Position numbers and translations under genes: made by a program
Shown: piece by piece, positions 1,344-30,022 of the stretch
Layout of the letters: each line of letters opens with the position of its first letter
Position numbering within the stretch: the first letter of the stretch is position 1
The notes under the pieces: generated by a model
Seen by the model: only the letters and a program-made list of their open reading frames with translations
Databases searched by the model: none
Told to the model about the DNA's origin: nothing
Sequence record: MK599315.1
Direction: 5' to 3' (one strand)
Length of the DNA stretch: 64,000 nt

Positions 1344-2996
1344 TTAAATCCTACTTTTCGGTTCCCCAGTCATATACCGGAGAGTTAGATTAAGCGTGTG
1401 GATGTTGACACTGAATGCAAGACCACCACCAGCCTTGATATAAGCTAAACGAGATTTAAAGAATCGATCGGATTCTTCAATAGCCTCTTTAGAATACACG
1501 GCGTTGAATGACACAGTGTCACCGTCGAAGTCCGCACCAAGAGGAGCAAGTATAGACGGGGAAATAGACGTGGAGTCATGCCATTGCGCCGGTTCGTTAA
1601 TAGTGATGATTGGATATTCTAATGCGATCTCAGCATTAGTATCTCGTTCCCAGTCCCAACCAAGTGGGTAGCGCATCTCACCTTTAACAGTTGTCTTCAC
1701 GTACATCTTTACAGGAATAGAACTGTTATAGTTCTCAACAGGGTAACGAGTAACGAATGCGGAGTTTCTTTTCCACATAGGTAATCCGCTTAGGTAAATC
1801 AATTCAGCATAGGAAATAGGACGCACGAACTTCTTGTCGAGCTTCTTCGGCATTTCTTCAATATCCCTAAAGATCTTGAAGTTTTGCTTGTCATCTAGAT
1901 AGACTAACGCCAGATAATGACCAGCGATTTCAATCGCACGAGAACGTTTGTCGATGACTTTCAGTTCGCCAATAACACGTTCAAGACCCTCGGGTGTTCC
2001 CCACAAGTCCATCTCTTCGTTACTGATATTAACCCACTCTAGTTTCAGTGTTTTCTTATTGATAAGCTCAACGCGTGTGGAGAGGCTATCGAAAACTTGA
2101 CCAACAACACCATTACGCAAATGGTAAATAGTTTTTGGTTTAACAGAAACAGCTGCTTGATAAATACCGATTACAGCATCTTTAAACTTAGGACGGTTCG
2201 GTTGATCAAGATCCGCAGCATTAGTATCGAGCGAACTAATAACGTTACGAGTACCATTGAATACTCGACGGCTTGCCCATTTTTGCTGAATATAACCACC
2301 CTTACCTGACAACAGGTTTTCATAGTGGTTATAAATTGCAAGAGCGGTTAACTGCATCGAAGTGCGTTTACGATCATAAATACTCAGATCGTCATTAGGA
2401 CCGAAGTATTCAGGAACGCCATAAGACTGGTTGAGTAGGTATCGATAATGTTCGTTAACCTCATCCATCGATACACGTCCATCAACGTCAATCTCGGCCT
2501 CACGATATGCAGCTGGAATAACGAGCATATTTTTGAAGGTACAGTTTTTCATGTACTTCTTCATCAATTCTACTCGGACTCGACGAATAGATGATTTAGT
2601 TTCACCGAAATCGATCTTCTTCCAGTTATCAAAGAAAAAGGCGTAACCGGTTTTACCTTCGAGCTCGTTGGAACGTACGAAGTCTTTAGCAACTGGGTCA
2701 AATACAGCGAACGATTTACCAAGAATGATCTCTTCGTAGAATGCCTTTAACTTAATAAGGTTACGATAAATCACAGGGTGGATAATCTCAAGACCCATGT
2801 TGATATAACCGAATCGACCTTCACGTTCATTAGAACCTACTCGTCCGAAAATCTCTACGGAGAATAAACCCTTCTCATGAAAGTTACCACCGGTACCTTC
2901 GAAGATCTCGTGGCTAGTTACTTGTCCCAACATCGAAAGCTGTGCTTGGGTCGGAATCAAAAGATCAATGTTGAATGGGACTAGTGCCTTCTTCAT
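1344..2996 (-). CDS. Virion RNA polymerase beta' subunit, catalytic half (phiKZ gp180-like)
   Basis: Catalytic motif LGADFDGDTVS near the C-terminus; KGGYIQQKWASRRVFNGTRNVIS resembles the beta' clamp/switch region; Shine-Dalgarno (SD) GAGG upstream. Confidence 0.93.
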   Translation of the reverse strand: MKKALVPFNIDLLIPTQAQLSMLGQVTSHEIFEGTGGNFHEKGLFSVEIFGRVGSNEREGRFGYINMGLEIIHPVIYRNLIKLKAFYEEIILGKSFAVFDPVAKDFVRSNELEGKTGYAFFFDNWKKIDFGETKSSIRRVRVELMKKYMKNCTFKNMLVIPAAYREAEIDVDGRVSMDEVNEHYRYLLNQSYGVPEYFGPNDDLSIYDRKRTSMQLTALAIYNHYENLLSGKGGYIQQKWASRRVFNGTRNVISSLDTNAADLDQPNRPKFKDAVIGIYQAAVSVKPKTIYHLRNGVVGQVFDSLSTRVELINKKTLKLEWVNISNEEMDLWGTPEGLERVIGELKVIDKRSRAIEIAGHYLALVYLDDKQNFKIFRDIEEMPKKLDKKFVRPISYAELIYLSGLPMWKRNSAFVTRYPVENYNSSIPVKMYVKTTVKGEMRYPLGWDWERDTNAEIALEYPIITINEPAQWHDSTSISPSILAPLGADFDGDTVSFNAVYSKEAIEESDRFFKSRLAYIKAGGGLAFSVNIHTLNLTLRYMTGEPKSRI

Positions 2997-22734: not shown

Positions 22735-25700
22735 TCACCGCAAATATGCGGGAACATTAGATTTGGGTTTAAGGGGTATCTCGAAATCAACTGCCGGAAT
22801 CTCGATGTCGAATTTTTCGAATGCTTTCTGAAGAACGTTGTGTATTACTTTGTTCTCATCGAACTCTGTTTCATCACCATGATCTTCCATTGCTTCTCCA
22901 ATTTCAAATGGAGATTTGATACCCATAATCGCTTCTACCTGATCTTGACTCCATTTAAGAATATCAGCCGATCGGGTAGAGATATTTGGGATATCTCCAG
23001 TATCGAGAGAACACTGGTAAACGACAACTTGAGAATCTTGACCTAAACGATAAGCACGAGATATAGCCTGTTCTAGAATATAAGCTCTGAATGGACTATT
23101 CAATAGAATCAGAGTATCTGCCATTGTCAGGCGAACAGCTGTCGATAGAGAAGCATATGTAGCATTGAGTGGATTTAGTTCCTTACTCGAATCGAAACGT
23201 TTAACGATTTCAGCCAGTTCATTAGTAGTCTTCCCATAAACGGCCAGTGGTTTCATACCTAGCTTAACGCAATGTGTATCCGCAGCTTCTACTGCTTCAA
23301 CAAAGCTAGTAAACATAATCGTCTTCTTGTGAGTGGATTCTGTAATACCGACCCAGTCAACATACGGGACCATTGCCACATGACATTCAATACGTTTACC
23401 ACCTAACACACGACCAAGACATTCACCTTGAATCTTGAGGTTAGTATATTTGATAACCGATTTAATATCCCTGAACTCATGGATGAACTGCTTTGGAAGG
23501 GAAGGACCAAATACTAATTTTTCATATTGGTTCGTTGCTTTGATTTCCTCTCCTGCAAAGCGTGGATCAGGGATCTGTTGAACATACTTGACCAGATCCA
23601 AGTACTCTTTGAAGGCTCTTTCTTGTGCAGCTGTTTTGAGGGTTTTTCGATGGAGTCCACAGAACTCTGCCCAGCGTTTATCATCTTCAGGTCTCCGCTT
23701 CTTGTAGTAAGCCCAGCGTTCTTGAATAAATGCTTCCATAACCTTTCTAATAGCCGGAAGGGTGAAGTCATCACCATTCGGAATTTTAATTGGATAAGGA
23801 CGCATGATCGGGGGCTCTAGGTCGAGTTCTTGTTTCTCTACCTTGTAGGATACGAGACCTAATCGATGTCTGATTATATCGAGTCCTTTAGATGCTTCTT
23901 TACCATACATCTTCTTGAAGCGTTCTTCTACCTGCGGAGTGAATAGAGGATCTACTATTCGCAGTAAGTTAATCAGTTCAACACCCAATGCTTTTACAGG
24001 CGTGCCCGAAGCTAAAAGATTATTACGAGAACCGACCATCTTTACAATGAGTTGATAAAGTTTAGTCCGTGTAGAGTTAGGGTCATTCATGTTGTGCGAT
24101 TCATCTAGAATCGTCACAGTACGTTTGCTACCAACTATATTACGGTTTCTAAGAAGTTCTACTACCTTATCCATTGCATCGTAATGACAGACGATCCAAC
24201 GCTGTCCTTTGTAGGGCATATTAGGTTCGAACGTATGCCAAACTGTTTGCGGCTTATGGAACATCTCTTTCAGGGAATCTAACCAGACTAGATCCAAAGC
24301 ATTCTTAGGACACATTACAACAATGAGTTCAGCATCAAGCATCTCGGCAATAGCTGAAGTAAGATATGTGTTATGTGTCACGACGAAATCATCGGTCACG
24401 TAAAGGTGATCGGGATGTTCAACCTGAATACATTGACACTCCACTCGATCCGACAGGTTAACATGTTTCACCTGTAAACGAAGATTATCCGCGTATTGGT
24501 TATTGTCGTTGCATCGAGCTATTTTGCGATCAAGGCGGAAAAGTGCACTGGGGGTATCAAACCGGACAGCTACCCGATAAGACATGTTACCGTACTTCTT
24601 GACGCCGTTGTACGTGAATGTAGGCTCTTTGAACGCCAGTTTGGCAATTCCACCCAGGGAACGAACTAGGTACTGGAACTGCTTGGCTAACATGTAGCTG
24701 CAACTGGTGAAACTTAGGTTGCTATTCTCGTCAACTGTACCATCCGTGTCCATAAGACCTTGTACAAGAGCCAATCGCTGGGCAGTAGAACCGAATAGGT
24801 ATTCTTGCGGAATGAATTTAGAAAGGGAATTCGTTCCTAGCAAATTCATATCTCGAAGAGCACTGATATACGGGTTACGCTCACCTTTCTTGTTGATGAC
24901 CCCCATGGTAATGCGTCACGGGCGATAAGATTGAGGTTATCCGGGAGAGCTTTACTGAACGTATCGAATAGTTGAGGGTCACCACTGGTAATGGTCACAC
25001 AACTCGAACTGATCCCGCCATCGCCAAGAATAACCCCGAGGTTATACGGATCGATCGGTAGATCGACATCCATACCTTCTTCGGACTTACAGAGTTGAAC
25101 GTAAAGTCGATTCCGGTATGATTTCATAGACATGTAACCGAACAGGGTGGTGGTGTTGATTACTCGCCAACCATCACTACCGTCCCTCGTCCAATTATAG
25201 CAATAGACTCGCCATAGGTGCTCATCACATGCTTCGGTCGTGCGACCGTCTTTGAATGTAACCGTAAAAGTTTGTTTCTTTCCTTGTGGGTAAACGCCGG
25301 TGACCTTAGTCGGGGTACCGTCCCAAGCAGTGACCATGTCACCAACTTGAATATCACCCATACGTTTCCAGCCACCAGGAATTTTAACCATGGCGTTTAG
25401 TGGTTGTGCCTTACCCGTACCGGCGGCCGCGGCAATTAAGTCACCATTTAGATTGTATTGATCTAGCCGATATGTGTAGTTCTTGAAATACTCTAATTGA
25501 TACGGTTTTGGATCAAATTTTAATCGAGACAGATTAGCTAGATTAAGTCGCCCTTGTACTGATTTCTCATCAATGGCTTTAGTAGAGGCAAGCCAAGTAT
25601 TCTGTAAAAGCGCATCTTTAATAGCAGCGATCATTTTTACAGAGGTGTATCGAGAACGGTAATAGACAATGTTTTCCAACATGTACATTACTTCAGGTGC

Positions 25701-25889
25701 AAAGAACTTATAGAAGCTTAATGAGTTCCGACCAATGTTGTTGAACAAGTTGGTTGTAATCTTGGAAGTCTTCCAATGCTTACTGATATCTCGGACTATG
25801 TCGAAGCCACGAATACCAGAGATGATAATCTCCGTTTCAGTTTCTTTGACTGTCAAGCCGCCAAATATCGAACGGAATGAGTCTAACAT
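22735..25889 (-). CDS. SNF2/SF2 helicase (phiKZ gp203-like) containing an intein; -1 frameshift inside the intein near 24910
   Basis: Walker A AAAAGTGK|T is split by the intein; Walker B ILDESHN, motif III ASGTP, motif VI EQAISRAYRLGQ. The precursor would be 1051 aa and the spliced protein 704 aa if one base is restored. Confidence 0.88.
24370..25409 (-). mobile_element. Class 3 intein with LAGLIDADG homing endonuclease
   Basis: Starts AQPL (Ala1); block B CDEHLW, block F CQCIQV, block G VVTHN/T; endonuclease blocks LGVILGDGG and VQGLMDTDG. The span is 1040 nt, one base short of 347 codons. Confidence 0.9.
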
Positions 25890-25970
25890 GTGGGTTTATC
25901 CTTAAGGGGTAAATTCATAGAATTGGCCTACGTGTAAGATTTAGAAAAAGATTACTAAAACAGTAATGAT

Positions 25971-26096
25971 ATAGTCAAGGCAGTCGCGCATAGCGCTGCA
26001 CTTTAAGGGGGTGATCCAGCCGATTCTTTAACTTGATACGTTAAAGTATTTGCGGGAGCAAAGACGAGTATCTAACTACGGTGCCTTGACGACTAT
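25971..26096 (+). ncRNA. Candidate structured non-coding RNA
   Basis: Closing stem ATAGTC-AAGGCA / TGCCTT-GAC-GACTAT; internal hairpins CTTTAAC/GTTAAAG and TTTGC-GGGA-GCAAA; no ORF; upstream AAAGATTAC motif and downstream terminator. Confidence 0.4.
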
Positions 26097-26120
26097 GTTT
26101 GGACTCTCTAATCTAAACAG

Positions 26121-26153
26121 ACATATCGCCCGGCTCAATGCCGGGCTTTATGT
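26121..26153. terminator. Bidirectional terminator
   Basis: ACATATC-GCCCGGC-TCAAT-GCCGGGC-TTTATGT. Confidence 0.7.
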
Positions 26154-26157
26154 TGTC

Positions 26158-27111
26158 TCATCGAATCAAACGTAAAGCTGGATTGAATCCACGGCTACTA
26201 CCATAAGCTGTAAAAGCATTGTCAAGCTGGTGAGCGATAGATGTGCTAAATCCACGTTGGATACAACGGTTATCTTCAGTAACAGCTTTATAGAAAATAT
26301 TCAAGCCATTACCTGGAGCTATAGACGATGGTAACTGATTACCATAACGACTGCGTTGATAACCAGAATACAACTGTCCAGTTGGGTTTACTGCTGTATT
26401 GAATAGACGTTCGAAGGTATCTAAAGCTAGATCATTCATCACATGGAGACTTACCATCGCATCAGTAGCATTGGTGTATACTACCTTATCACCATGTGGG
26501 ATACATCCAACAGCAAAACTATTACCATTCCTAGAATAGATCTTACCCTGCATTACAGCTGGATTAGTAAGAGATGATGGCAAAGTACCAACACCATCTT
26601 CTACCGTATCAAGGAGAACACCTGCCCTATAAACATCCATGAATGACATTCCAGAATATGGAACTCTGTTCGGGATGTAATACGTTACACCTTTGAACTG
26701 TATTTTCCATGCTTCTGTTGGTTGATCAACAGTATTCGTGAAGTTAGATGGTAAAGCCAAATTTGTTTTAAAATCCGCTACCTCAAAAACATCTTCGATT
26801 GGACATGTTCCGAAGTAACCAATCCACCAGTCACCGAATACGGGAGTTTCGGGACCAGGTCCTTTATTAGTGTAATCAATAATGCAAATAGCTTTTACAT
26901 CACTCAATACGAAAGAACCTGTATTGTCCGTACCAATAACAAGATAGAAATAAGGTGTATCTTTCAAAGCGGTATCGTCTACAAATTCTCGATCAGTAAC
27001 ATCCAGCTGCTTAAAAACAGCTGGAAGATTATTCACATCAAATGGTTCTGTAGAACGATAAGCTTTTAAGTCAACAATATCACCTGTAACCGAAAAGCCT
27101 ACTTTAATCAT
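26158..27111 (-). CDS. Virion structural protein, paralogue 4 of a tandem family (phiKZ gp131-like tail family)
   Basis: N-terminal FN3-like segment; GPGP..GYFG, WKI, SFMDVYRAG and terminal FNPALRL motifs. Confidence 0.7.
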   Translation of the reverse strand: MIKVGFSVTGDIVDLKAYRSTEPFDVNNLPAVFKQLDVTDREFVDDTALKDTPYFYLVIGTDNTGSFVLSDVKAICIIDYTNKGPGPETPVFGDWWIGYFGTCPIEDVFEVADFKTNLALPSNFTNTVDQPTEAWKIQFKGVTYYIPNRVPYSGMSFMDVYRAGVLLDTVEDGVGTLPSSLTNPAVMQGKIYSRNGNSFAVGCIPHGDKVVYTNATDAMVSLHVMNDLALDTFERLFNTAVNPTGQLYSGYQRSRYGNQLPSSIAPGNGLNIFYKAVTEDNRCIQRGFSTSIAHQLDNAFTAYGSSRGFNPALRLIR

Positions 27112-27119
27112 CGAATCAC

Positions 27120-28070
27120 CTATAGCTCTAGTTCTAGAATTGGCATGAATGCAGCCGCGCTATTTACCAGAGTATTGGAAACGTTTATAAGCGCTGCACC
27201 TCTGACCAATATAGACTGGGTTTCACCTACGAATGTACGCGTCATGAAGATACCCGAACCAGGTGCGCCACCCGTCATTACAACGTTCGTTGAAGTCGAG
27301 TTAACGCGTGTTTTAAGGTTAGGCTTATTGATGTTAGATGCATATGCAATTAGACGATCCCATGTGAGGCCAAGTAGATCATTAAACTGATCATAGACAG
27401 CCTGTCCAGCAGCTATACTTGCGAGTGATCGTTCACCAGCAAATGTAGGCAGGCCAACTCTGTAACTATGATTCTTAATAATGACAGTCTTACCTTGTTC
27501 GGTTGGCGTACCAACTACAGTCTTAACAGGAGCAGGAAGATCATCCCAATGATCTCCAGGTGTTGACCAAGCACAACCCGCATTATAGACATCGGCCCAA
27601 CGTAGGTTATAAGCCACGTAGCGAATTGGCAGCATGAAAATGCGCCCATCTACAACGAACTTATGCCAAATGAAATCCGTTACAGGTGGAATTCTAATAT
27701 CAGTCAAAAGACTGAGTCCACAAAGATCTGTTATTTCACCAGGTAATACAAAATCTGGAACCTCACCAAAATAACCTAATTCATAGTCTCCAGAACGAAG
27801 GGTATTTGGTCCGAAACCAGTGTAAGGCATGTTAGCAAGTGCAACCACTTTGGAATAGGTTACATCACCATTCTCAAAATTAGAACCGATGCAGTAATAG
27901 TAGACTTTATTTCTAATAGCTGTTGTATCATCGTACTCTTTGATGTTTCCTTGCACATTAACTAATACACTAGGTAATGTCGATTCATCGAATTTTGTTT
28001 CAGATCGAAAAATATCAAATGTGACTGCTTCTCGATCATTGGTCAAACCCCATTGTACTTTAATACCCAT
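27120..28070 (-). CDS. Virion structural protein, paralogue 3
   Basis: IKVQW..FDIFRS..YYY FN3-like segment; GFGP..GYFG, WHKF, WADVYNAG, FMPILEL. Confidence 0.7.
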   Translation of the reverse strand: MGIKVQWGLTNDREAVTFDIFRSETKFDESTLPSVLVNVQGNIKEYDDTTAIRNKVYYYCIGSNFENGDVTYSKVVALANMPYTGFGPNTLRSGDYELGYFGEVPDFVLPGEITDLCGLSLLTDIRIPPVTDFIWHKFVVDGRIFMLPIRYVAYNLRWADVYNAGCAWSTPGDHWDDLPAPVKTVVGTPTEQGKTVIIKNHSYRVGLPTFAGERSLASIAAGQAVYDQFNDLLGLTWDRLIAYASNINKPNLKTRVNSTSTNVVMTGGAPGSGIFMTRTFVGETQSILVRGAALINVSNTLVNSAAAFMPILELEL

Positions 28071-28072
28071 GA

Positions 28073-29059
28073 TTACACCTCAAAGTCAACGAAGTTACCA
28101 GGGATAAGTTCCAGTACAGGGAACCAAATGTTTGAACTTGAGGTTCTACCTGTATGTTGAGGTACAAAAGCCGAAGCTTTCGTTGCACTCGTATTTCGCG
28201 AAATATATGCAGAAGCTGGAGTGGTTGGAGTATCTCGTGTTAGAATAGCTTTACTATTAACACGTGTAGCCTCATTATCACCGGTTACGTTAACTCGTTC
28301 CAATGTTTTATTAGCATAGAACTGACTAGTCATACCGGCTAAAAATAACTCGACGGTACCATTACTGAGAGATGGGTCAGAATTACCTAATGCAGTCGCT
28401 GCGGATGACGATAGATCACTAACAGAATTAGGATCATCGTGATCAACTAGAACGGAAGGCAAAGATACTTCAAATTCAGATAGAGCAAAATTGATTCGCT
28501 TGCCCTGAGGAACAGGAGTAGTAACACCGGGGACAGCGGATGGTACTGCGTTCTTACTGTATACTAGACCCGCATTATAGAGGTCCATCCAGTACAGAGT
28601 ACCAGTTGCGATGGAATATTCAGGTACATAGAAAGTCCGTCCTTTCCATGCGAATTTATGCCAACGTTGACCAGCATTATTAGCTGCGTTCCAGGACAAA
28701 CCACAACGAGCGATTAGTTCACTGTCCGAAATAAATTCAACAGTGGGAAGAGAACCGTAGTAACCATAATTGATGTTACCTGCAACCAAGCGCTGTGGAC
28801 CAGGTCCAGTGAAAGGTACCGCATGGAACTGGAATACACGAGATTTAGCTACATCCCCATCTTTCGATGATTCAAACATGTAGTAGTAAATAAGTCCATA
28901 TGTAAGCCCTTCGTCAGCATAACCATCAACGTCACCATTGACTTCTGCTATTGGTGTACCAGGGTTGTTTCTATCAATCATTGTTGCTGATCGATAAATT
29001 TTAATACTTACGGACGCGTCGTTTGGGTTTACCCAACGTAGATTGATTGTAAATGCCAT
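28073..29059 (-). CDS. Virion structural protein, paralogue 2
   Basis: INLRW..IKIYRS..YYY; GPGP..GYYG, WHKF, WMDLYNAG, WFPVLEL. Confidence 0.7.
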   Translation of the reverse strand: MAFTINLRWVNPNDASVSIKIYRSATMIDRNNPGTPIAEVNGDVDGYADEGLTYGLIYYYMFESSKDGDVAKSRVFQFHAVPFTGPGPQRLVAGNINYGYYGSLPTVEFISDSELIARCGLSWNAANNAGQRWHKFAWKGRTFYVPEYSIATGTLYWMDLYNAGLVYSKNAVPSAVPGVTTPVPQGKRINFALSEFEVSLPSVLVDHDDPNSVSDLSSSAATALGNSDPSLSNGTVELFLAGMTSQFYANKTLERVNVTGDNEATRVNSKAILTRDTPTTPASAYISRNTSATKASAFVPQHTGRTSSSNIWFPVLELIPGNFVDFEV

Positions 29060-29071
29060 GTTAAATCATCC

Positions 29072-30022
29072 TCATGTGAAACTAAAGCTATTAATTCTAA
29101 CTTCAGCTGTTTTATCTATCTTTCGCGATATACTGTTCAAGTCGATAAGCGTTTCATCTTGTGGGGCATTGCTAATATAAGCAATACTTACAGGAGTTGG
29201 TAGTGAAGTAAGCTGAATAATAGGTTGAATTCCACCAGAGCTGATTTCTGTATTAGTTATAATACTAGCTTCGGCTAAATTACTGTAAGCATTAATAGTC
29301 GTTTCTATTGGTACTAGGTGATATTCATCTTTAGGAATCAGCTCTAATACCGGACGCCAAATACCATTATTCGTTGGGGCATTATTATTTACAGACGTGA
29401 TACTTGTGTTGTAAAACTGATACATTGGGCGCTGGGCTGTATTCAATGCCTTTGTCCATGTACCGTTACCAAGACCGATAACACTTGTGGGTCTATTGTC
29501 CCAAGACCCATTAGTCACTCGTGTAAATACCTGACCAAGTTCACTTGTTGGGTCTTCATTATTAGTTGGAGTGAATGGGTTCTCAGTTAGATGACCCATA
29601 CGGATTCTAAACTGCCAGCTCCCTTCATCGTCAGTAAAATGATAGAACTTATCTTGAACGGTATTATATCCACTTGGAATATTTTGACCAATCGTGTTGT
29701 CTCCAAATACAAGGCCTTTGTCGTAAAGAACCTTCCATGAGACGTTGGTCATGTAGATAGATAAAGGTGCAAAACAAACCTTACCCATCCAGAAATATTT
29801 AACCCATTGTTGATTAGCGAATGAACCTACAATAGAGTTGGTATAGTCGGCTATATCTGCCTGTTCGATAAACCGTTCACGAAAATAAATATCTTTCGAA
29901 TCGACTAGACCGAAATACCCAAGTGTCTCATTACCCTTTATTAGGAATTTACTTCCTGGTCCAGAAAATGGATACTCTATAGCTTGCTTCTTTTGACTCA
30001 ATGATAACAGCACTTCAAACAT
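29072..30022 (-). CDS. Virion structural protein, paralogue 1 (no FN3-like domain, has a C-terminal extension)
   Basis: GPGS..GYFG, WVKY, SWKVLYDKG, WRPVLEL. Confidence 0.7.
   Translation of the reverse strand: MFEVLLSLSQKKQAIEYPFSGPGSKFLIKGNETLGYFGLVDSKDIYFRERFIEQADIADYTNSIVGSFANQQWVKYFWMGKVCFAPLSIYMTNVSWKVLYDKGLVFGDNTIGQNIPSGYNTVQDKFYHFTDDEGSWQFRIRMGHLTENPFTPTNNEDPTSELGQVFTRVTNGSWDNRPTSVIGLGNGTWTKALNTAQRPMYQFYNTSITSVNNNAPTNNGIWRPVLELIPKDEYHLVPIETTINAYSNLAEASIITNTEISSGGIQPIIQLTSLPTPVSIAYISNAPQDETLIDLNSISRKIDKTAEVRINSFSFT

What the first reader, a model, noticed from the sequence alone, without database searches (positions are those of the whole stretch)
25947..26153. Structured intergenic RNA candidate, antisense to the late block, with its own promoter-like motif and terminator
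Seen: a 268 bp gap with no ORF. Long-range pairing 25971-25982 with 26082-26096 encloses several hairpins: GCAG..GCGC/GCGC-TGC (25980-25999), CTTTAAC/GTTAAAG (26026-26046) and TTTGC-GGGA-GCAAA, a GNRA loop (26049-26062). Another hairpin lies at about 26097-26119, then a terminator. AAAGATTAC at 25947-25955 matches the recalled phiKZ middle-promoter consensus AAanntTAC. It is not a tRNA. Inference: a ~125-180 nt phage sRNA or multi-branch RNA of unknown class. The minus-strand orientation is not excluded.
Basis: partly seen in the sequence, partly recalled or inferred. Interest (0 to 1): 0.65.

Follow-up and report, generated by a model that had tools for sequence, protein, structure and literature searches.

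The report
Jumbo-phage RNA complementary to 16S tail
The gap holds a real small structured RNA gene found in phiKZ-like Pseudomonas phages, and its most conserved stretch is the mirror image of the free 3' end of the host's 16S ribosomal RNA, so it probably docks on the small ribosomal subunit.

Summary
Window 25890-26157 is an ORF-free gap. It holds a + strand gene for a non-coding RNA of about 150-180 nt.

- **Promoter and ends:** there is a phiKZ middle-promoter motif at 25947-25955. The 5' end is inferred near 25973, carried over from the phiKZ orthologue. An intrinsic terminator lies at 26128-26149.
- **Fold:** a three-way junction (P1, P2, GNRA-capped P3). Across 25 relatives, 92% of cells pair and all 30 pairs show compensatory change.
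- **Distribution:** one copy per genome in ten named Pseudomonas jumbo phages of the phiKZ-like group (Chimalliviridae, my attribution). It was not found in 18 other jumbo phages.
- **Expression:** in phiKZ, Nanopore cDNA contigs pile up on exactly this element. Cap-side adapter ends fall at the A of TATAG.
the junction strand 26004-26022 is the reverse complement of the last 19 nt of Pseudomonas 16S rRNA, with one G.U. 16S positions 1528-1540 are pairable in all 25 relatives. The few variants are pair-preserving.

It matches no Rfam family, and I found no paper on it.

Best reading (about 0.55): it docks on the 30S anti-Shine-Dalgarno tail as a non-translated super-Shine-Dalgarno decoy. Binding is inferred, not shown.

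This scan reached the same reading earlier on other DNA (s1-156085).

The parts
25947..25955 (+). phiKZ-type middle-promoter motif AAAGATTAC (consensus AAanTTACc)
   Evidence: Conserved as AAAnnnTAC in all family-A relatives. It is centred 22-23 nt upstream of the mapped start, as published for phiKZ middle promoters (about -24; PMC4666361).
25970..25974 (+). TATAG start-site element; inferred 5' end of the RNA at about 25973 (+/-2)
   Evidence: TATAG is invariant in family A; families B and C have TATGT. In phiKZ, three Nanopore cDNA records end at the A of TATAG with the strand-switch adapter attached (L193:2175 = AF399011 212853).
25971..25982 (+). P1, 5' strand (AUAGUC + AAGGCA)
   Evidence: Pairs with 26082-26096. 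All 12 pairs show double-sided changes in 25 relatives; 88-90% of cells are paired.
25983..25999 (+). P2 hairpin
   Evidence: Covariation, helices 3-4. An example is GCAGU-UUCG-ACUGC in L151 against GUACU-UUCG-AGUAC in L167.
26004..26022 (+). Junction strand UAAGGGGGUGAUCCAGCCG: complement of 16S rRNA 1524-1542 (anti-Shine-Dalgarno tail plus the base of helix 45)
   Evidence: Compared with a real Pseudomonas 16S 3' end: 19 of 19 positions pairable, with one G.U at 26009. Predicted duplex is -38.2 kcal/mol, the strongest site in the 64-kb window; the next best is -28.1. Positions facing 16S 1528-1540 are pairable in 25 of 25 relatives.
26035..26072 (+). P3 domain: P3a (26035-39 with 26068-72) enclosing P3b (26046-26065) capped by the GNRA loop GGGA
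   Evidence: P3a cells are 99% paired, with compensatory GAUAC/GUAUC to GGGGU/ACCCC. All P3b pairs covary, and the GNRA loop is kept in families A, B and C.
26073..26096 (+). Junction CUAACUACGG plus P1 3' strand UGCCUUGACGACUAU; also partly complementary to 16S about 1493-1513
   Evidence: CUAACUACG is invariant in family A. This 3' segment's best site in the whole 16S lies 43-50 nt from the 16S 3' end for the window, Temi, PhiPA3, phiKZ, 201phi2-1, L194 and four of the five distinct family-B sequences. It is not the best site for L160, L187, L192, family C, Psa21 or Phabio.
26097..26118 (+). P4 hairpin (GUUUGGA...UCUAAAC)
   Evidence: Predicted. Relatives have a hairpin at the same place with a different stem sequence. 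In phiKZ the Nanopore 3' end lies just after it.
26128..26149 (+). Intrinsic terminator: GCCCGGC-ucaau-GCCGGGC followed by UUU(AUG)
   Evidence: A GC hairpin plus TTTATG sits at the same position in all relatives, with different stem sequences. The phiKZ Illumina contig ends at the equivalent point.

Best explanation
This is a stand-alone gene for a structured non-coding RNA of about 150-180 nt. It is transcribed on the + strand from a phiKZ-type middle promoter, by a phage-encoded RNA polymerase, and it ends at its own intrinsic terminator.

The RNA folds into a three-way junction:
- P1 is the closing stem.
- P2 is a small hairpin.
- P3 is a long arm capped by a GNRA tetraloop.
- P4 and the terminator hairpin follow.

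The strand joining P2 to P3 carries AAGGGGGUGAUCCAGCC. This is a 13-19-nt complement of the free 3' tail of host 16S rRNA, that is, the anti-Shine-Dalgarno sequence and the nucleotides next to it.

The most likely mechanism is that the RNA base-pairs with that tail on 30S subunits as a non-translated 'super Shine-Dalgarno'. The predicted duplex is several-fold stronger than any Shine-Dalgarno of the phage's own mRNAs. The RNA would occupy the mRNA-docking site, and so sequester or reprogram a share of host small subunits from mid-infection on.

Shown here: the gene, its conservation, its fold, transcription of the orthologue, and the complementarity with its pattern of variation.

Inferred: binding to 30S in vivo, and what follows from it (inhibition, tethering or protection).
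For: - **Conservation in changing contexts.** The DNA is conserved across several named genera of Pseudomonas jumbo phages while the gene context differs. There is one copy per genome.
- **Fold.** In 25 sequences 92.0% of cells pair and 30 of 30 pairs change on both sides. 0 of 500 shuffles reach this, and slid controls give 27-41%.
- **Homology beyond the training set.** Family B was not used to train model R2, yet it scores 46-50 bits.
- **Expression in phiKZ.** Adapter-tagged 5' ends lie at TATAG, a poly(A)-side end lies 150 nt downstream, and a separate 210-nt Illumina contig covers the element.
- **Promoter.** It fits the published middle-promoter motif and spacing.
- **Complementarity.** The comparison uses a 16S end read from Pseudomonas genomes. 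It is -38.2 kcal/mol and unique in the window. Window ORFs have ordinary Shine-Dalgarno sites (median -4.9, best -13.2).
- **Pattern of variation.** 16S 1528-1540 is pairable in 25 of 25 relatives. Nearly all variation at positions facing 1541, 1537 and 1526 is A<->G, G<->A or C<->U, which keeps a pair with the fixed U, U and G of the rRNA (one exception each at 1541 and 1526). Pairing drops sharply outside 1525-1541: 6 of 25 at 1524 and 12 of 25 at 1542.
- **No other target found.** There is no reverse-strand copy of the motif in the phage genomes. The phiKZ genome holds no site better than -24 kcal/mol. Five Pseudomonas genomes hold no conserved perfect target; the recurring near-match is the 16S gene itself.
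- **Not coding.** Stops occur in all frames, and no start codon is conserved downstream.
- **Precedent.** rreB, a 165-nt RNA with a 17-nt Shine-Dalgarno, co-sediments with 30S (PMC5711450).
Against: - No binding data exist. I could not read Grad-seq profiles for this locus.
- Single-sequence thermodynamic folding gives the motif only about 0.45 mean unpaired probability against 0.39 for the rest of the RNA. Accessibility is therefore not demonstrated.
- 17 of the 25 sequences were collected with a pattern that required the motif, so part of the invariance is by construction. The clean evidence comes from 10 sequences: 5 found by blastn and 5 by covariance model.
- Pairing with 1525-1529 would require opening the base of helix 45. 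Phabio and DT01 have lost part of that stretch.
- The phage's own genes use ordinary Shine-Dalgarno sites. A global block would hurt the phage too, so the consequence of docking is unclear.
- The RNA was not found in EL, OBP or any non-Pseudomonas jumbo phage tested. Co-variation with a different host 16S tail could therefore not be tested.
Confidence: 0.55

Rival explanations
1. The RNA docks on the 16S tail as above, but its purpose is not competition with mRNAs. It would act as a shield, tether or guide. As a shield it would protect the 16S 3' end from nucleases. As a tether it would anchor a phage factor bound to P3, or hold 30S subunits at a site in the cell. As a guide it would form, with its second complementary segment, a long duplex that invades helix 45 and marks the tail for cleavage.
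For: The complementarity runs 5 nt into helix 45 (16S 1525-1529, paired in 23-25 of 25). That is more than a Shine-Dalgarno decoy needs. In the window, Temi, phiKZ, PhiPA3, 201phi2-1, L194 and most of family B, the P1 3' strand's best site in the whole 16S is the opposite strand of the same helix (about 1493-1513, -21 to -29 kcal/mol). The conserved GNRA-capped P3 arm has no assigned role. The phage itself depends on Shine-Dalgarno-led initiation.
Against: The second-site complementarity is not the top site in L160, L187, L188, L192, family C, Psa21 or Phabio. It coincides with P1, which is needed for the RNA's own fold. No partner protein or nuclease is identified.
Confidence: 0.2
2. It is a structured phage sRNA whose function has nothing to do with 16S rRNA. 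The G-rich junction strand would be conserved for tertiary structure or for binding a protein, for instance an RNA chaperone or a phage nuclear-shell or export factor. The match to the rRNA tail would be incidental or an evolutionary relic.
For: The motif is not clearly accessible in thermodynamic predictions. The P1 5' strand also resembles the sense 16S sequence CAAGGUAG, which could mean descent from captured rDNA rather than present function. The RNA is absent from many jumbo phages that face the same ribosome problem.
Against: A 13-17-nt exact complement of one particular host RNA end is very unlikely by chance. It is the only block of the RNA that does not vary, and its rare substitutions all keep pairing with the rRNA. 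A relic would decay. GGA-in-loop motifs of the RsmA type are not conserved: the P3b loops are GGGA, GUGA, GAGA and GCGA.
Confidence: 0.12
3. It is a cis-acting 5' leader or attenuator of the downstream gene, the kind of '5'UTR-derived ncRNA by premature termination' reported for phiKZ. Read-through of its terminator would control gp204-like genes.
For: In phiKZ, 201phi2-1 and PhiPA3 the next gene lies on the same strand. A paper lists 17 such 5'UTR candidates in phiKZ (PMC10914365). Its table is not held, so I could not see whether this locus is one of them.
Against: The downstream gene differs in every genus: gp204, gp305, the helicase. In this window and PA1C the next genes (26158-30022) are all on the opposite strand, so there is nothing to lead into. 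The element keeps its own promoter and terminator wherever it sits.
Confidence: 0.06
4. It is a tiny mRNA of the rreB type. The long Shine-Dalgarno would drive or throttle translation of a very short peptide.
For: rreB and rreR have the same kind of 16-17-nt Shine-Dalgarno and a similar overall length.
Against: No AUG, GUG or UUG lies at a workable distance after the motif in all members. The only shared GUG lies inside the motif itself. The frames that follow end after 4-10 codons with unrelated sequences. Substitutions follow helices, not codons.
Confidence: 0.03

Closest known systems
rreB / rreR small mRNAs of alpha-proteobacteria (Hahn et al. 2016, PMC5711450)
   Same: A short transcript (165 nt) carries a 16-17-nt complement of the 16S 3' end. 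For rreB this was shown to hold the RNA on 30S subunits and to impede translation rather than favour it.
   Different: rreB is a chromosomal bacterial gene that encodes a 14-aa peptide with a GTG start. The phage RNA has no conserved ORF, a covarying three-way-junction fold with the motif in the junction, no sequence similarity to rreB, and is virus-encoded.
Ordinary and extended Shine-Dalgarno sites of mRNAs
   Same: The same base-pairing partner (16S 1530-1541) and the same core GGAGG/GGGGG.
   Different: Window ORFs have duplexes of about -5 kcal/mol, -13 at best. The RNA reaches -21 against the 13-nt tail and -38 against 20 nt. No start codon follows. The complementarity runs into helix 45.
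Published phiKZ-group small RNAs: PHIKZ298 3'UTR and p40 5'UTR (PMC8545117), the sRNA upstream of gp182 / 201phi2-1 sRNA005 (PMC11512511), and the PHIKZ221 and PHIKZ302 5'UTR RNAs (PMC10914365)
   Same: Abundant short phage transcripts in the same phages. Some are conserved between genera, and all are of unknown function.
   Different: They lie at other loci. None is reported to be complementary to 16S rRNA: '16S' occurs 0 times in the main text of PMC10914365, and once in PMC11512511 for host taxonomy only.
Viral RNA elements that pair with small-subunit rRNA in eukaryotes, such as IRES-18S contacts (recalled from my own knowledge, not tested here)
   Same: A virus uses direct RNA-rRNA base pairing to engage the small ribosomal subunit.
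   Different: Those are cis elements of viral mRNAs that promote their own translation. This one is a separate non-coding RNA in a bacteriophage.

Membership tests
Any Rfam 15 family | Covariance-model match at or near the gathering score | tested here: not met
   cmscan of window 25000-27000, both strands, E up to 10. The only hit is an unrelated weak match at 25550-25651 (Ysr100, 18.6 bits against a gathering score of 47). Nothing lies on 25947-26153.
tRNA / tmRNA | Cloverleaf or tmRNA architecture | tested here: not met
   ARAGORN finds 0 genes in the whole window.
rreB/rreR-type extended-Shine-Dalgarno small mRNA | At least 16 nt of complementarity to the 16S 3' end | tested here: met
   19 nt in the window. 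13-19 nt across the 25 relatives.
rreB/rreR-type extended-Shine-Dalgarno small mRNA | Conserved small ORF with a start codon downstream of the Shine-Dalgarno | tested here: not met
   No conserved start codon. Frames end after 4-10 unrelated codons. Variation follows helices.
rreB/rreR-type extended-Shine-Dalgarno small mRNA | Co-sedimentation with 30S subunits | not testable with these tools
   This needs gradient fractionation or the published Grad-seq profiles. Only contigs of RNA runs could be laid.
phiKZ middle-promoter transcription unit | Motif AAanTTACc centred about -24 from the start site | tested here: met
   AAAGATTAC lies at 25947-25955. The start maps to the A of TATAG in phiKZ, which gives a centre of -22/-23. 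The motif definition is from PMC4666361. Timing of expression was not tested.
Intrinsic (Rho-independent) terminator | GC-rich hairpin followed by a U tract, at the RNA 3' end | tested here: met
   It lies at 26128-26149. Stem sequences differ between relatives while the pairing and TTTATG are kept. The phiKZ Illumina contig ends there. One Nanopore record ends earlier, after P4.
Cis-regulatory 5' leader of a fixed downstream gene | The same downstream gene, on the same strand, in all members | tested here: not met
   The downstream gene is gp204 in phiKZ, gp305 in 201phi2-1 and the helicase in PhiPA3. In this window and PA1C it is a convergent virion gene.

The most novel reading that the evidence does not exclude
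Nucleus-forming Pseudomonas jumbo phages encode a dedicated antisense RNA against the ribosome itself. The structured RNA would clamp the 3' end of 16S rRNA, covering the anti-Shine-Dalgarno tail and, in many members, both strands of the base of helix 45. From mid-infection on it would take over, silence or mark host 30S subunits. This would be the first virus-encoded trans-acting RNA known to target bacterial rRNA. It would add a new layer of translational takeover beside the phage's ribosome-binding proteins.
Probability: 0.45. Interest if true: 0.9.

Novelty: new variant of a known kind. Interest (0 to 1): 0.8.

Why it matters
Phage takeover of host translation is known almost only through proteins. 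Here a conserved and expressed RNA, in the best-studied jumbo phages (phiKZ, PhiPA3, 201phi2-1), carries a sequence that can hardly have any partner other than the ribosome's mRNA-docking tail.

If it binds, it gives a directly testable handle on how nucleus-forming phages control ribosomes in the cytoplasm. These phages separate transcription from translation.

It would also be a natural example of an anti-anti-Shine-Dalgarno inhibitor, and a compact RNA scaffold that could be reused to target 30S subunits. It adds a well-supported new family to the very short list of phage non-coding RNAs with a mechanistic hypothesis.

Tried and rejected
- **Rfam:** no family matches.
- **tRNA/tmRNA:** none.
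- **Minus-strand RNA:** it folds nearly as well. It is rejected because the adapter and poly(A) ends in phiKZ, the promoter and the terminator all point to the + strand.
- **Published phiKZ and 201phi2-1 sRNAs:** these are other loci. PHIKZ_p58 = gp204.1, so 'p40' lies elsewhere.
- **'Family D':** 24 small viral contigs carry a perfect AAGGAGGTGATCCAGCC. The motif lies inside a conserved 62-aa ORF (..QGGDPA..) with synonymous third-position changes, so this is a coding coincidence and not an RNA of this kind. It has no Rfam match.
- **Second-site 'clamp' on 16S about 1493-1513:** real in the window, phiKZ, PhiPA3, L194 and most of family B, but not conserved across the family. I kept it only as a sub-hypothesis.
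- **Co-variation of the motif with a different host 16S tail:** not testable. No member was found in phages of Erwinia, Klebsiella, Serratia, E. coli, Vibrio, Aeromonas, Ralstonia, Burkholderia or Xanthomonas.
- **E. coli phage Goslar:** it has an intergenic AGGAGGTGATCC with a similar surrounding. One such hit is within chance expectation, the model does not match, and there are no relatives to compare.
- **Another target for the G-variant motif:**
  - the phage genomes hold no reverse-strand copy;
  - the window and the whole phiKZ genome hold nothing stronger than about -24 kcal/mol;
  - five Pseudomonas genomes hold only the 16S genes as a recurring near-match.
- **RsmA-type sponge:** GGA in loops is not conserved.
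- **Accessibility:** the partition-function test was neutral.
- **Supplementary tables:** those of PMC10914365 and PMC11512511 are not held. I cannot say whether the transcript is already listed there.

Full report
**1. The observation.** Window 25890-26157 is a 268-bp gap between two minus-strand ORFs (24846-25889 and 26158-27111). No ORF of 40 aa or more crosses 25906-26049 on either strand. The window is 100% identical here to Pseudomonas phages PA1C, PS119XW, BRkr and HHBS36_1. In PA1C, PS119XW and BRkr the gap carries no annotation; HHBS36_1 lists a hypothetical protein under the match. ARAGORN finds no tRNA and Rfam 15 has no match on the element.

**2. Conservation.** The core (about 25970-26096) is conserved at the DNA level in HPP-Temi (90%), PhiPA3 (81%), phiKZ (70%) and 201phi2-1 (72%). 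These are phages whose helicase proteins are only 51-58% identical to phiKZ gp203. The gene context changes while the element stays the same:
- in phiKZ it lies between the helicase (divergent) and gp204;
- in 201phi2-1 it lies between gp304 and gp305;
- in PhiPA3 it lies upstream of the helicase on the same strand;
- in this window a convergent virion gene follows it.

So it is an autonomous module, not a leader of one particular gene.

The one block that does not vary is TTTAAGGGGGTGATCCAGCC. I fetched real 16S rRNA 3' ends from Pseudomonas genomes...GTAGCCGTAGGGGAACCTGCGGCTGGATCACCTCCTTA. Window 26004-26022 (TAAGGGGGTGATCCAGCCG) is the reverse complement of the last 19 nt. The single difference is a G at 26009 instead of A, which gives a G.U pair with U1537 (E. 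coli numbering, recalled).

The predicted duplex with the last 20 nt is -38.2 kcal/mol. It is the strongest site in the whole 64-kb window on either strand; the next best is -28.1. Against the 13-nt free tail alone it is -21.1. The Shine-Dalgarno regions of 59 window ORFs have a median of -4.9 and a best of -13.2.

**4. The family.** A scan of viral contigs for AAGGRGGTGATCCARCC, and a second scan for the phiKZ variant of the motif, gave more phiKZ-like members and two further groups from jumbo-phage contigs.
- More phiKZ-like members: L126 (= PhiPA3), L160, L187, L188, L192, L194.
- Family B: 238-243-kb contigs. Their DNA polymerase is nearest to Xoo-sp14 and Noxifer, at 46-48% identity.
- Family C: contigs of 73-250 kb plus one short fragment; the three searched (172-250 kb) have gp203-like helicases at 36-45% identity, related to phage pPa_SNUABM_DT01.

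All share one plan: a TATAG or TATGT start element, closing stem P1, small hairpin P2, the motif as a joining strand, a long arm P3 capped by a GNRA loop, the P1 3' strand, and a GC hairpin plus TTTATG.

I built covariance model R1 from three close sequences with a hand-drawn structure. It found the rest of family A and family C over its full length. Model R2 (families A and C) then found family B at 46-50 bits, although B was not in its training set.

Scans of 23 more named jumbo-phage genomes found one copy each in Phabio, Psa21, Viktualia, Noxifer and DT01. They found none in:
- EL and OBP (Pseudomonas phages);
- RTH11 and Xoo-sp14 (Xanthomonas);
- RP12 (Ralstonia) and FLC9 (Burkholderia);
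- the Erwinia, Klebsiella, Serratia, Vibrio and Aeromonas phages tested, or E. coli phage Goslar.

These results are. phiKZ, PA1C, PhiPA3 and 201phi2-1 each have one copy. All named hosts are Pseudomonas.

**5. Structure.** On the model-based alignment of 25 sequences:
- 92.0% of 684 cells form standard pairs;
- all 30 pairs show changes on both sides (196 cells);
- no shuffle of 500 reaches any of the measures;
- sliding the partners by 1-3 columns drops pairing to 27-41% (14-sequence version).

The alignment is fitted to the model, which favours the structure. Even so, the contrast with the slid controls is large, and the compensatory changes are plain in the raw sequences. P3a is GAUAC/GUAUC in the window, GGGGU/ACCCC in phiKZ and GGUAC/GUACC in L187. 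P2 is GCAGU/ACUGC in L151 and GUACU/AGUAC in L167.

**6. Expression and ends.** phiKZ's copy is 100% identical to locus L193 (phage PA7) over 388 nt. I laid four RNA runs on L193:1750-2550.
- A Nanopore cDNA run has its contigs stacked only on 2026-2175.
- Three of its records end at 2175 followed by the reverse complement of the Nanopore strand-switch primer (my identification of the adapter). Single records end at 2169 and 2135.
- One record begins at 2026 preceded by a T run, which is the poly(A) side.

That places the RNA on the strand equivalent to the window's + strand. The 5' end is at the A of TATAG (AF399011 212853) and a 3' end lies 150 nt downstream, just after P4.

An Illumina run has a separate 210-nt contig (212830-213039) that runs through the terminator. 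These are contigs, so they show presence and ends, not abundance.

Transferred to the window, the start is about 25973, the ends are about 26120 and about 26150, and the length is about 150-180 nt.

The motif AAAGATTAC (25947-55) fits the published phiKZ middle-promoter element AAanTTACc, centred about -24. Families B and C carry TATG, the late-promoter start motif (PMC4666361).

**7. How the motif varies.** Across the 25 sequences, the positions facing 16S 1528-1540 are pairable in 25 of 25.
- The position facing U1541 is A (19), G (5) or C (1).
- The position facing U1537 is G (22) or A (3: Psa21, Phabio, Noxifer).
- The position facing G1526 is C (19), U (5) or A (1).

Nearly all changes are transitions that keep a pair with a fixed partner. 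Pairing is 23-25 of 25 for 1525-1527, and falls to 6 of 25 at 1524 and 12 of 25 at 1542. This is the signature of a strand selected to pair with an invariant external target.

One caveat applies. 17 of the 25 sequences were collected with a pattern that required the motif. The ten found without it are the window, Temi, PhiPA3, phiKZ and 201phi2-1 (by blastn) and Phabio, Psa21, DT01, Viktualia and Noxifer (by model). These ten show the same picture, and all the variation comes from them or from the phiKZ-type scan.

**8. Other targets.**
- The motif has no reverse-strand copy in the phage genomes.
- The best other complementary sites in the window and in all of phiKZ are no better than about -24 kcal/mol and look random.
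- In five Pseudomonas genomes, the perfect complement of the G-variant occurs once in one genome. The recurring one-mismatch hit is the set of 16S genes.

**9. A second complementary segment.** The junction plus P1 3' strand (26077-26096) resembles the reverse complement of 16S about 1493-1513, which is the other strand of the base of helix 45. For the window, Temi, PhiPA3, phiKZ, 201phi2-1, L194 and four of the five distinct family-B sequences, this is the best site in the entire 16S (-21 to -29 kcal/mol). For L160, L187, L188, L192, family C, DT01, Psa21 and Phabio it is not. Because it coincides with P1, I treat it as a possible clamp in some members or a trace of origin, not as a defining feature.

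**10. Interpretation.** The RNA is real, non-coding, autonomous and transcribed. Its invariant strand is best explained by pairing with the 16S 3' tail on 30S subunits.

The nearest precedent is rreB, a 165-nt bacterial RNA whose 17-nt Shine-Dalgarno holds it on 30S and hinders its own translation (PMC5711450). The phage RNA lacks the ORF that defines that family.

What docking achieves is open: competition with mRNAs, tethering, shielding, or marking the tail. The phage's own genes use ordinary Shine-Dalgarno sites, which argues against a crude global block. Thermodynamic folding does not show the motif to be clearly exposed.

I found no paper that describes this RNA or any phage RNA complementary to the 16S tail. 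The transcript may sit among the 17 unnamed phiKZ '5'UTR ncRNA candidates' of PMC10914365, whose table is not held.

After I had formed this reading, the scan's own notes showed that another agent reached the same conclusion on another piece of DNA (s1-156085). The notes also mention a second phiKZ sRNA with C-rich, anti-Shine-Dalgarno-like loops (s1-158278, s1-158496).

Noticed in passing
L135:1177-1365 (+) and about 250 nt downstream; the same in 23 other IMG/VR loci (L128, L130, L131, L137 ...): A conserved 62-aa ORF in small viral contigs contains a perfect 17-nt complement of the 16S tail (AAGGAGGTGATCCAGCC, read as ..QGGDPA..). Three covarying hairpins and a terminator follow it. The motif looks like a coding coincidence. 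The structured 3' region is unexplained and has no Rfam match.
   Followed up: partly
L222:801-1013 (-) = Escherichia phage Goslar NC_048170 87200-87412, between gp077 and gp076: This intergenic stretch has AGGAGGTGATCC (12 nt complementary to E. coli 16S 1529-1540). A 7-bp hairpin precedes it, and about 110 nt later come a GC hairpin and CTTTATGCCG, the same tail as the terminators of the Pseudomonas family. It could be an analogue in an E. coli nucleus-forming phage. One such hit is within chance, model R2 does not match, and no relatives exist to compare.
   Followed up: partly
L193:2220-2400 (+) = phiKZ, 5' part of the gp203 helicase transcript: The Nanopore cDNA contigs show an adapter-tagged start at 2220, 41 nt upstream of the helicase ATG and divergent from the sRNA start. 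A poly(A)-side end lies at 2400. This gives a 181-nt species that may be a prematurely ended or processed 5' fragment of the helicase mRNA.
   Followed up: no
window 22735-25889 (-) against L002 (PhiPA3): The helicase gene is on the opposite strand relative to the sRNA gene in PA1C and this window, and on the same strand in PhiPA3. The sRNA keeps its place next to the helicase 5' end, so there has been a local inversion between close relatives. The helicase here is interrupted (two overlapping ORFs, two tblastn pieces), which agrees with the intein noted earlier.
   Followed up: partly
L143:10477-10493 (+) and 2440-2456 (-), IMG/VR contig of 92.8 kb: Two inverted copies of the last 20 nt or so of E. 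coli 16S plus the start of the spacer (cttctttaaggtAAGGAGGTGATCCAACCg) lie 8 kb apart in a 'viral' contig. These look like host rrn-end fragments flanking something.
   Followed up: no
phiKZ genome (L237-L250); notes s1-158278 / s1-158496: The scan's notes describe a second conserved phiKZ sRNA of about 141 nt with C-rich loops that resemble the anti-Shine-Dalgarno sequence. A G5 run (this RNA) and C-rich loops (that RNA) could in principle pair. My genome-wide duplex scan found no phage site stronger than about -24 kcal/mol, and a 6-7-nt loop contact would not stand out in such a scan.
   Followed up: partly
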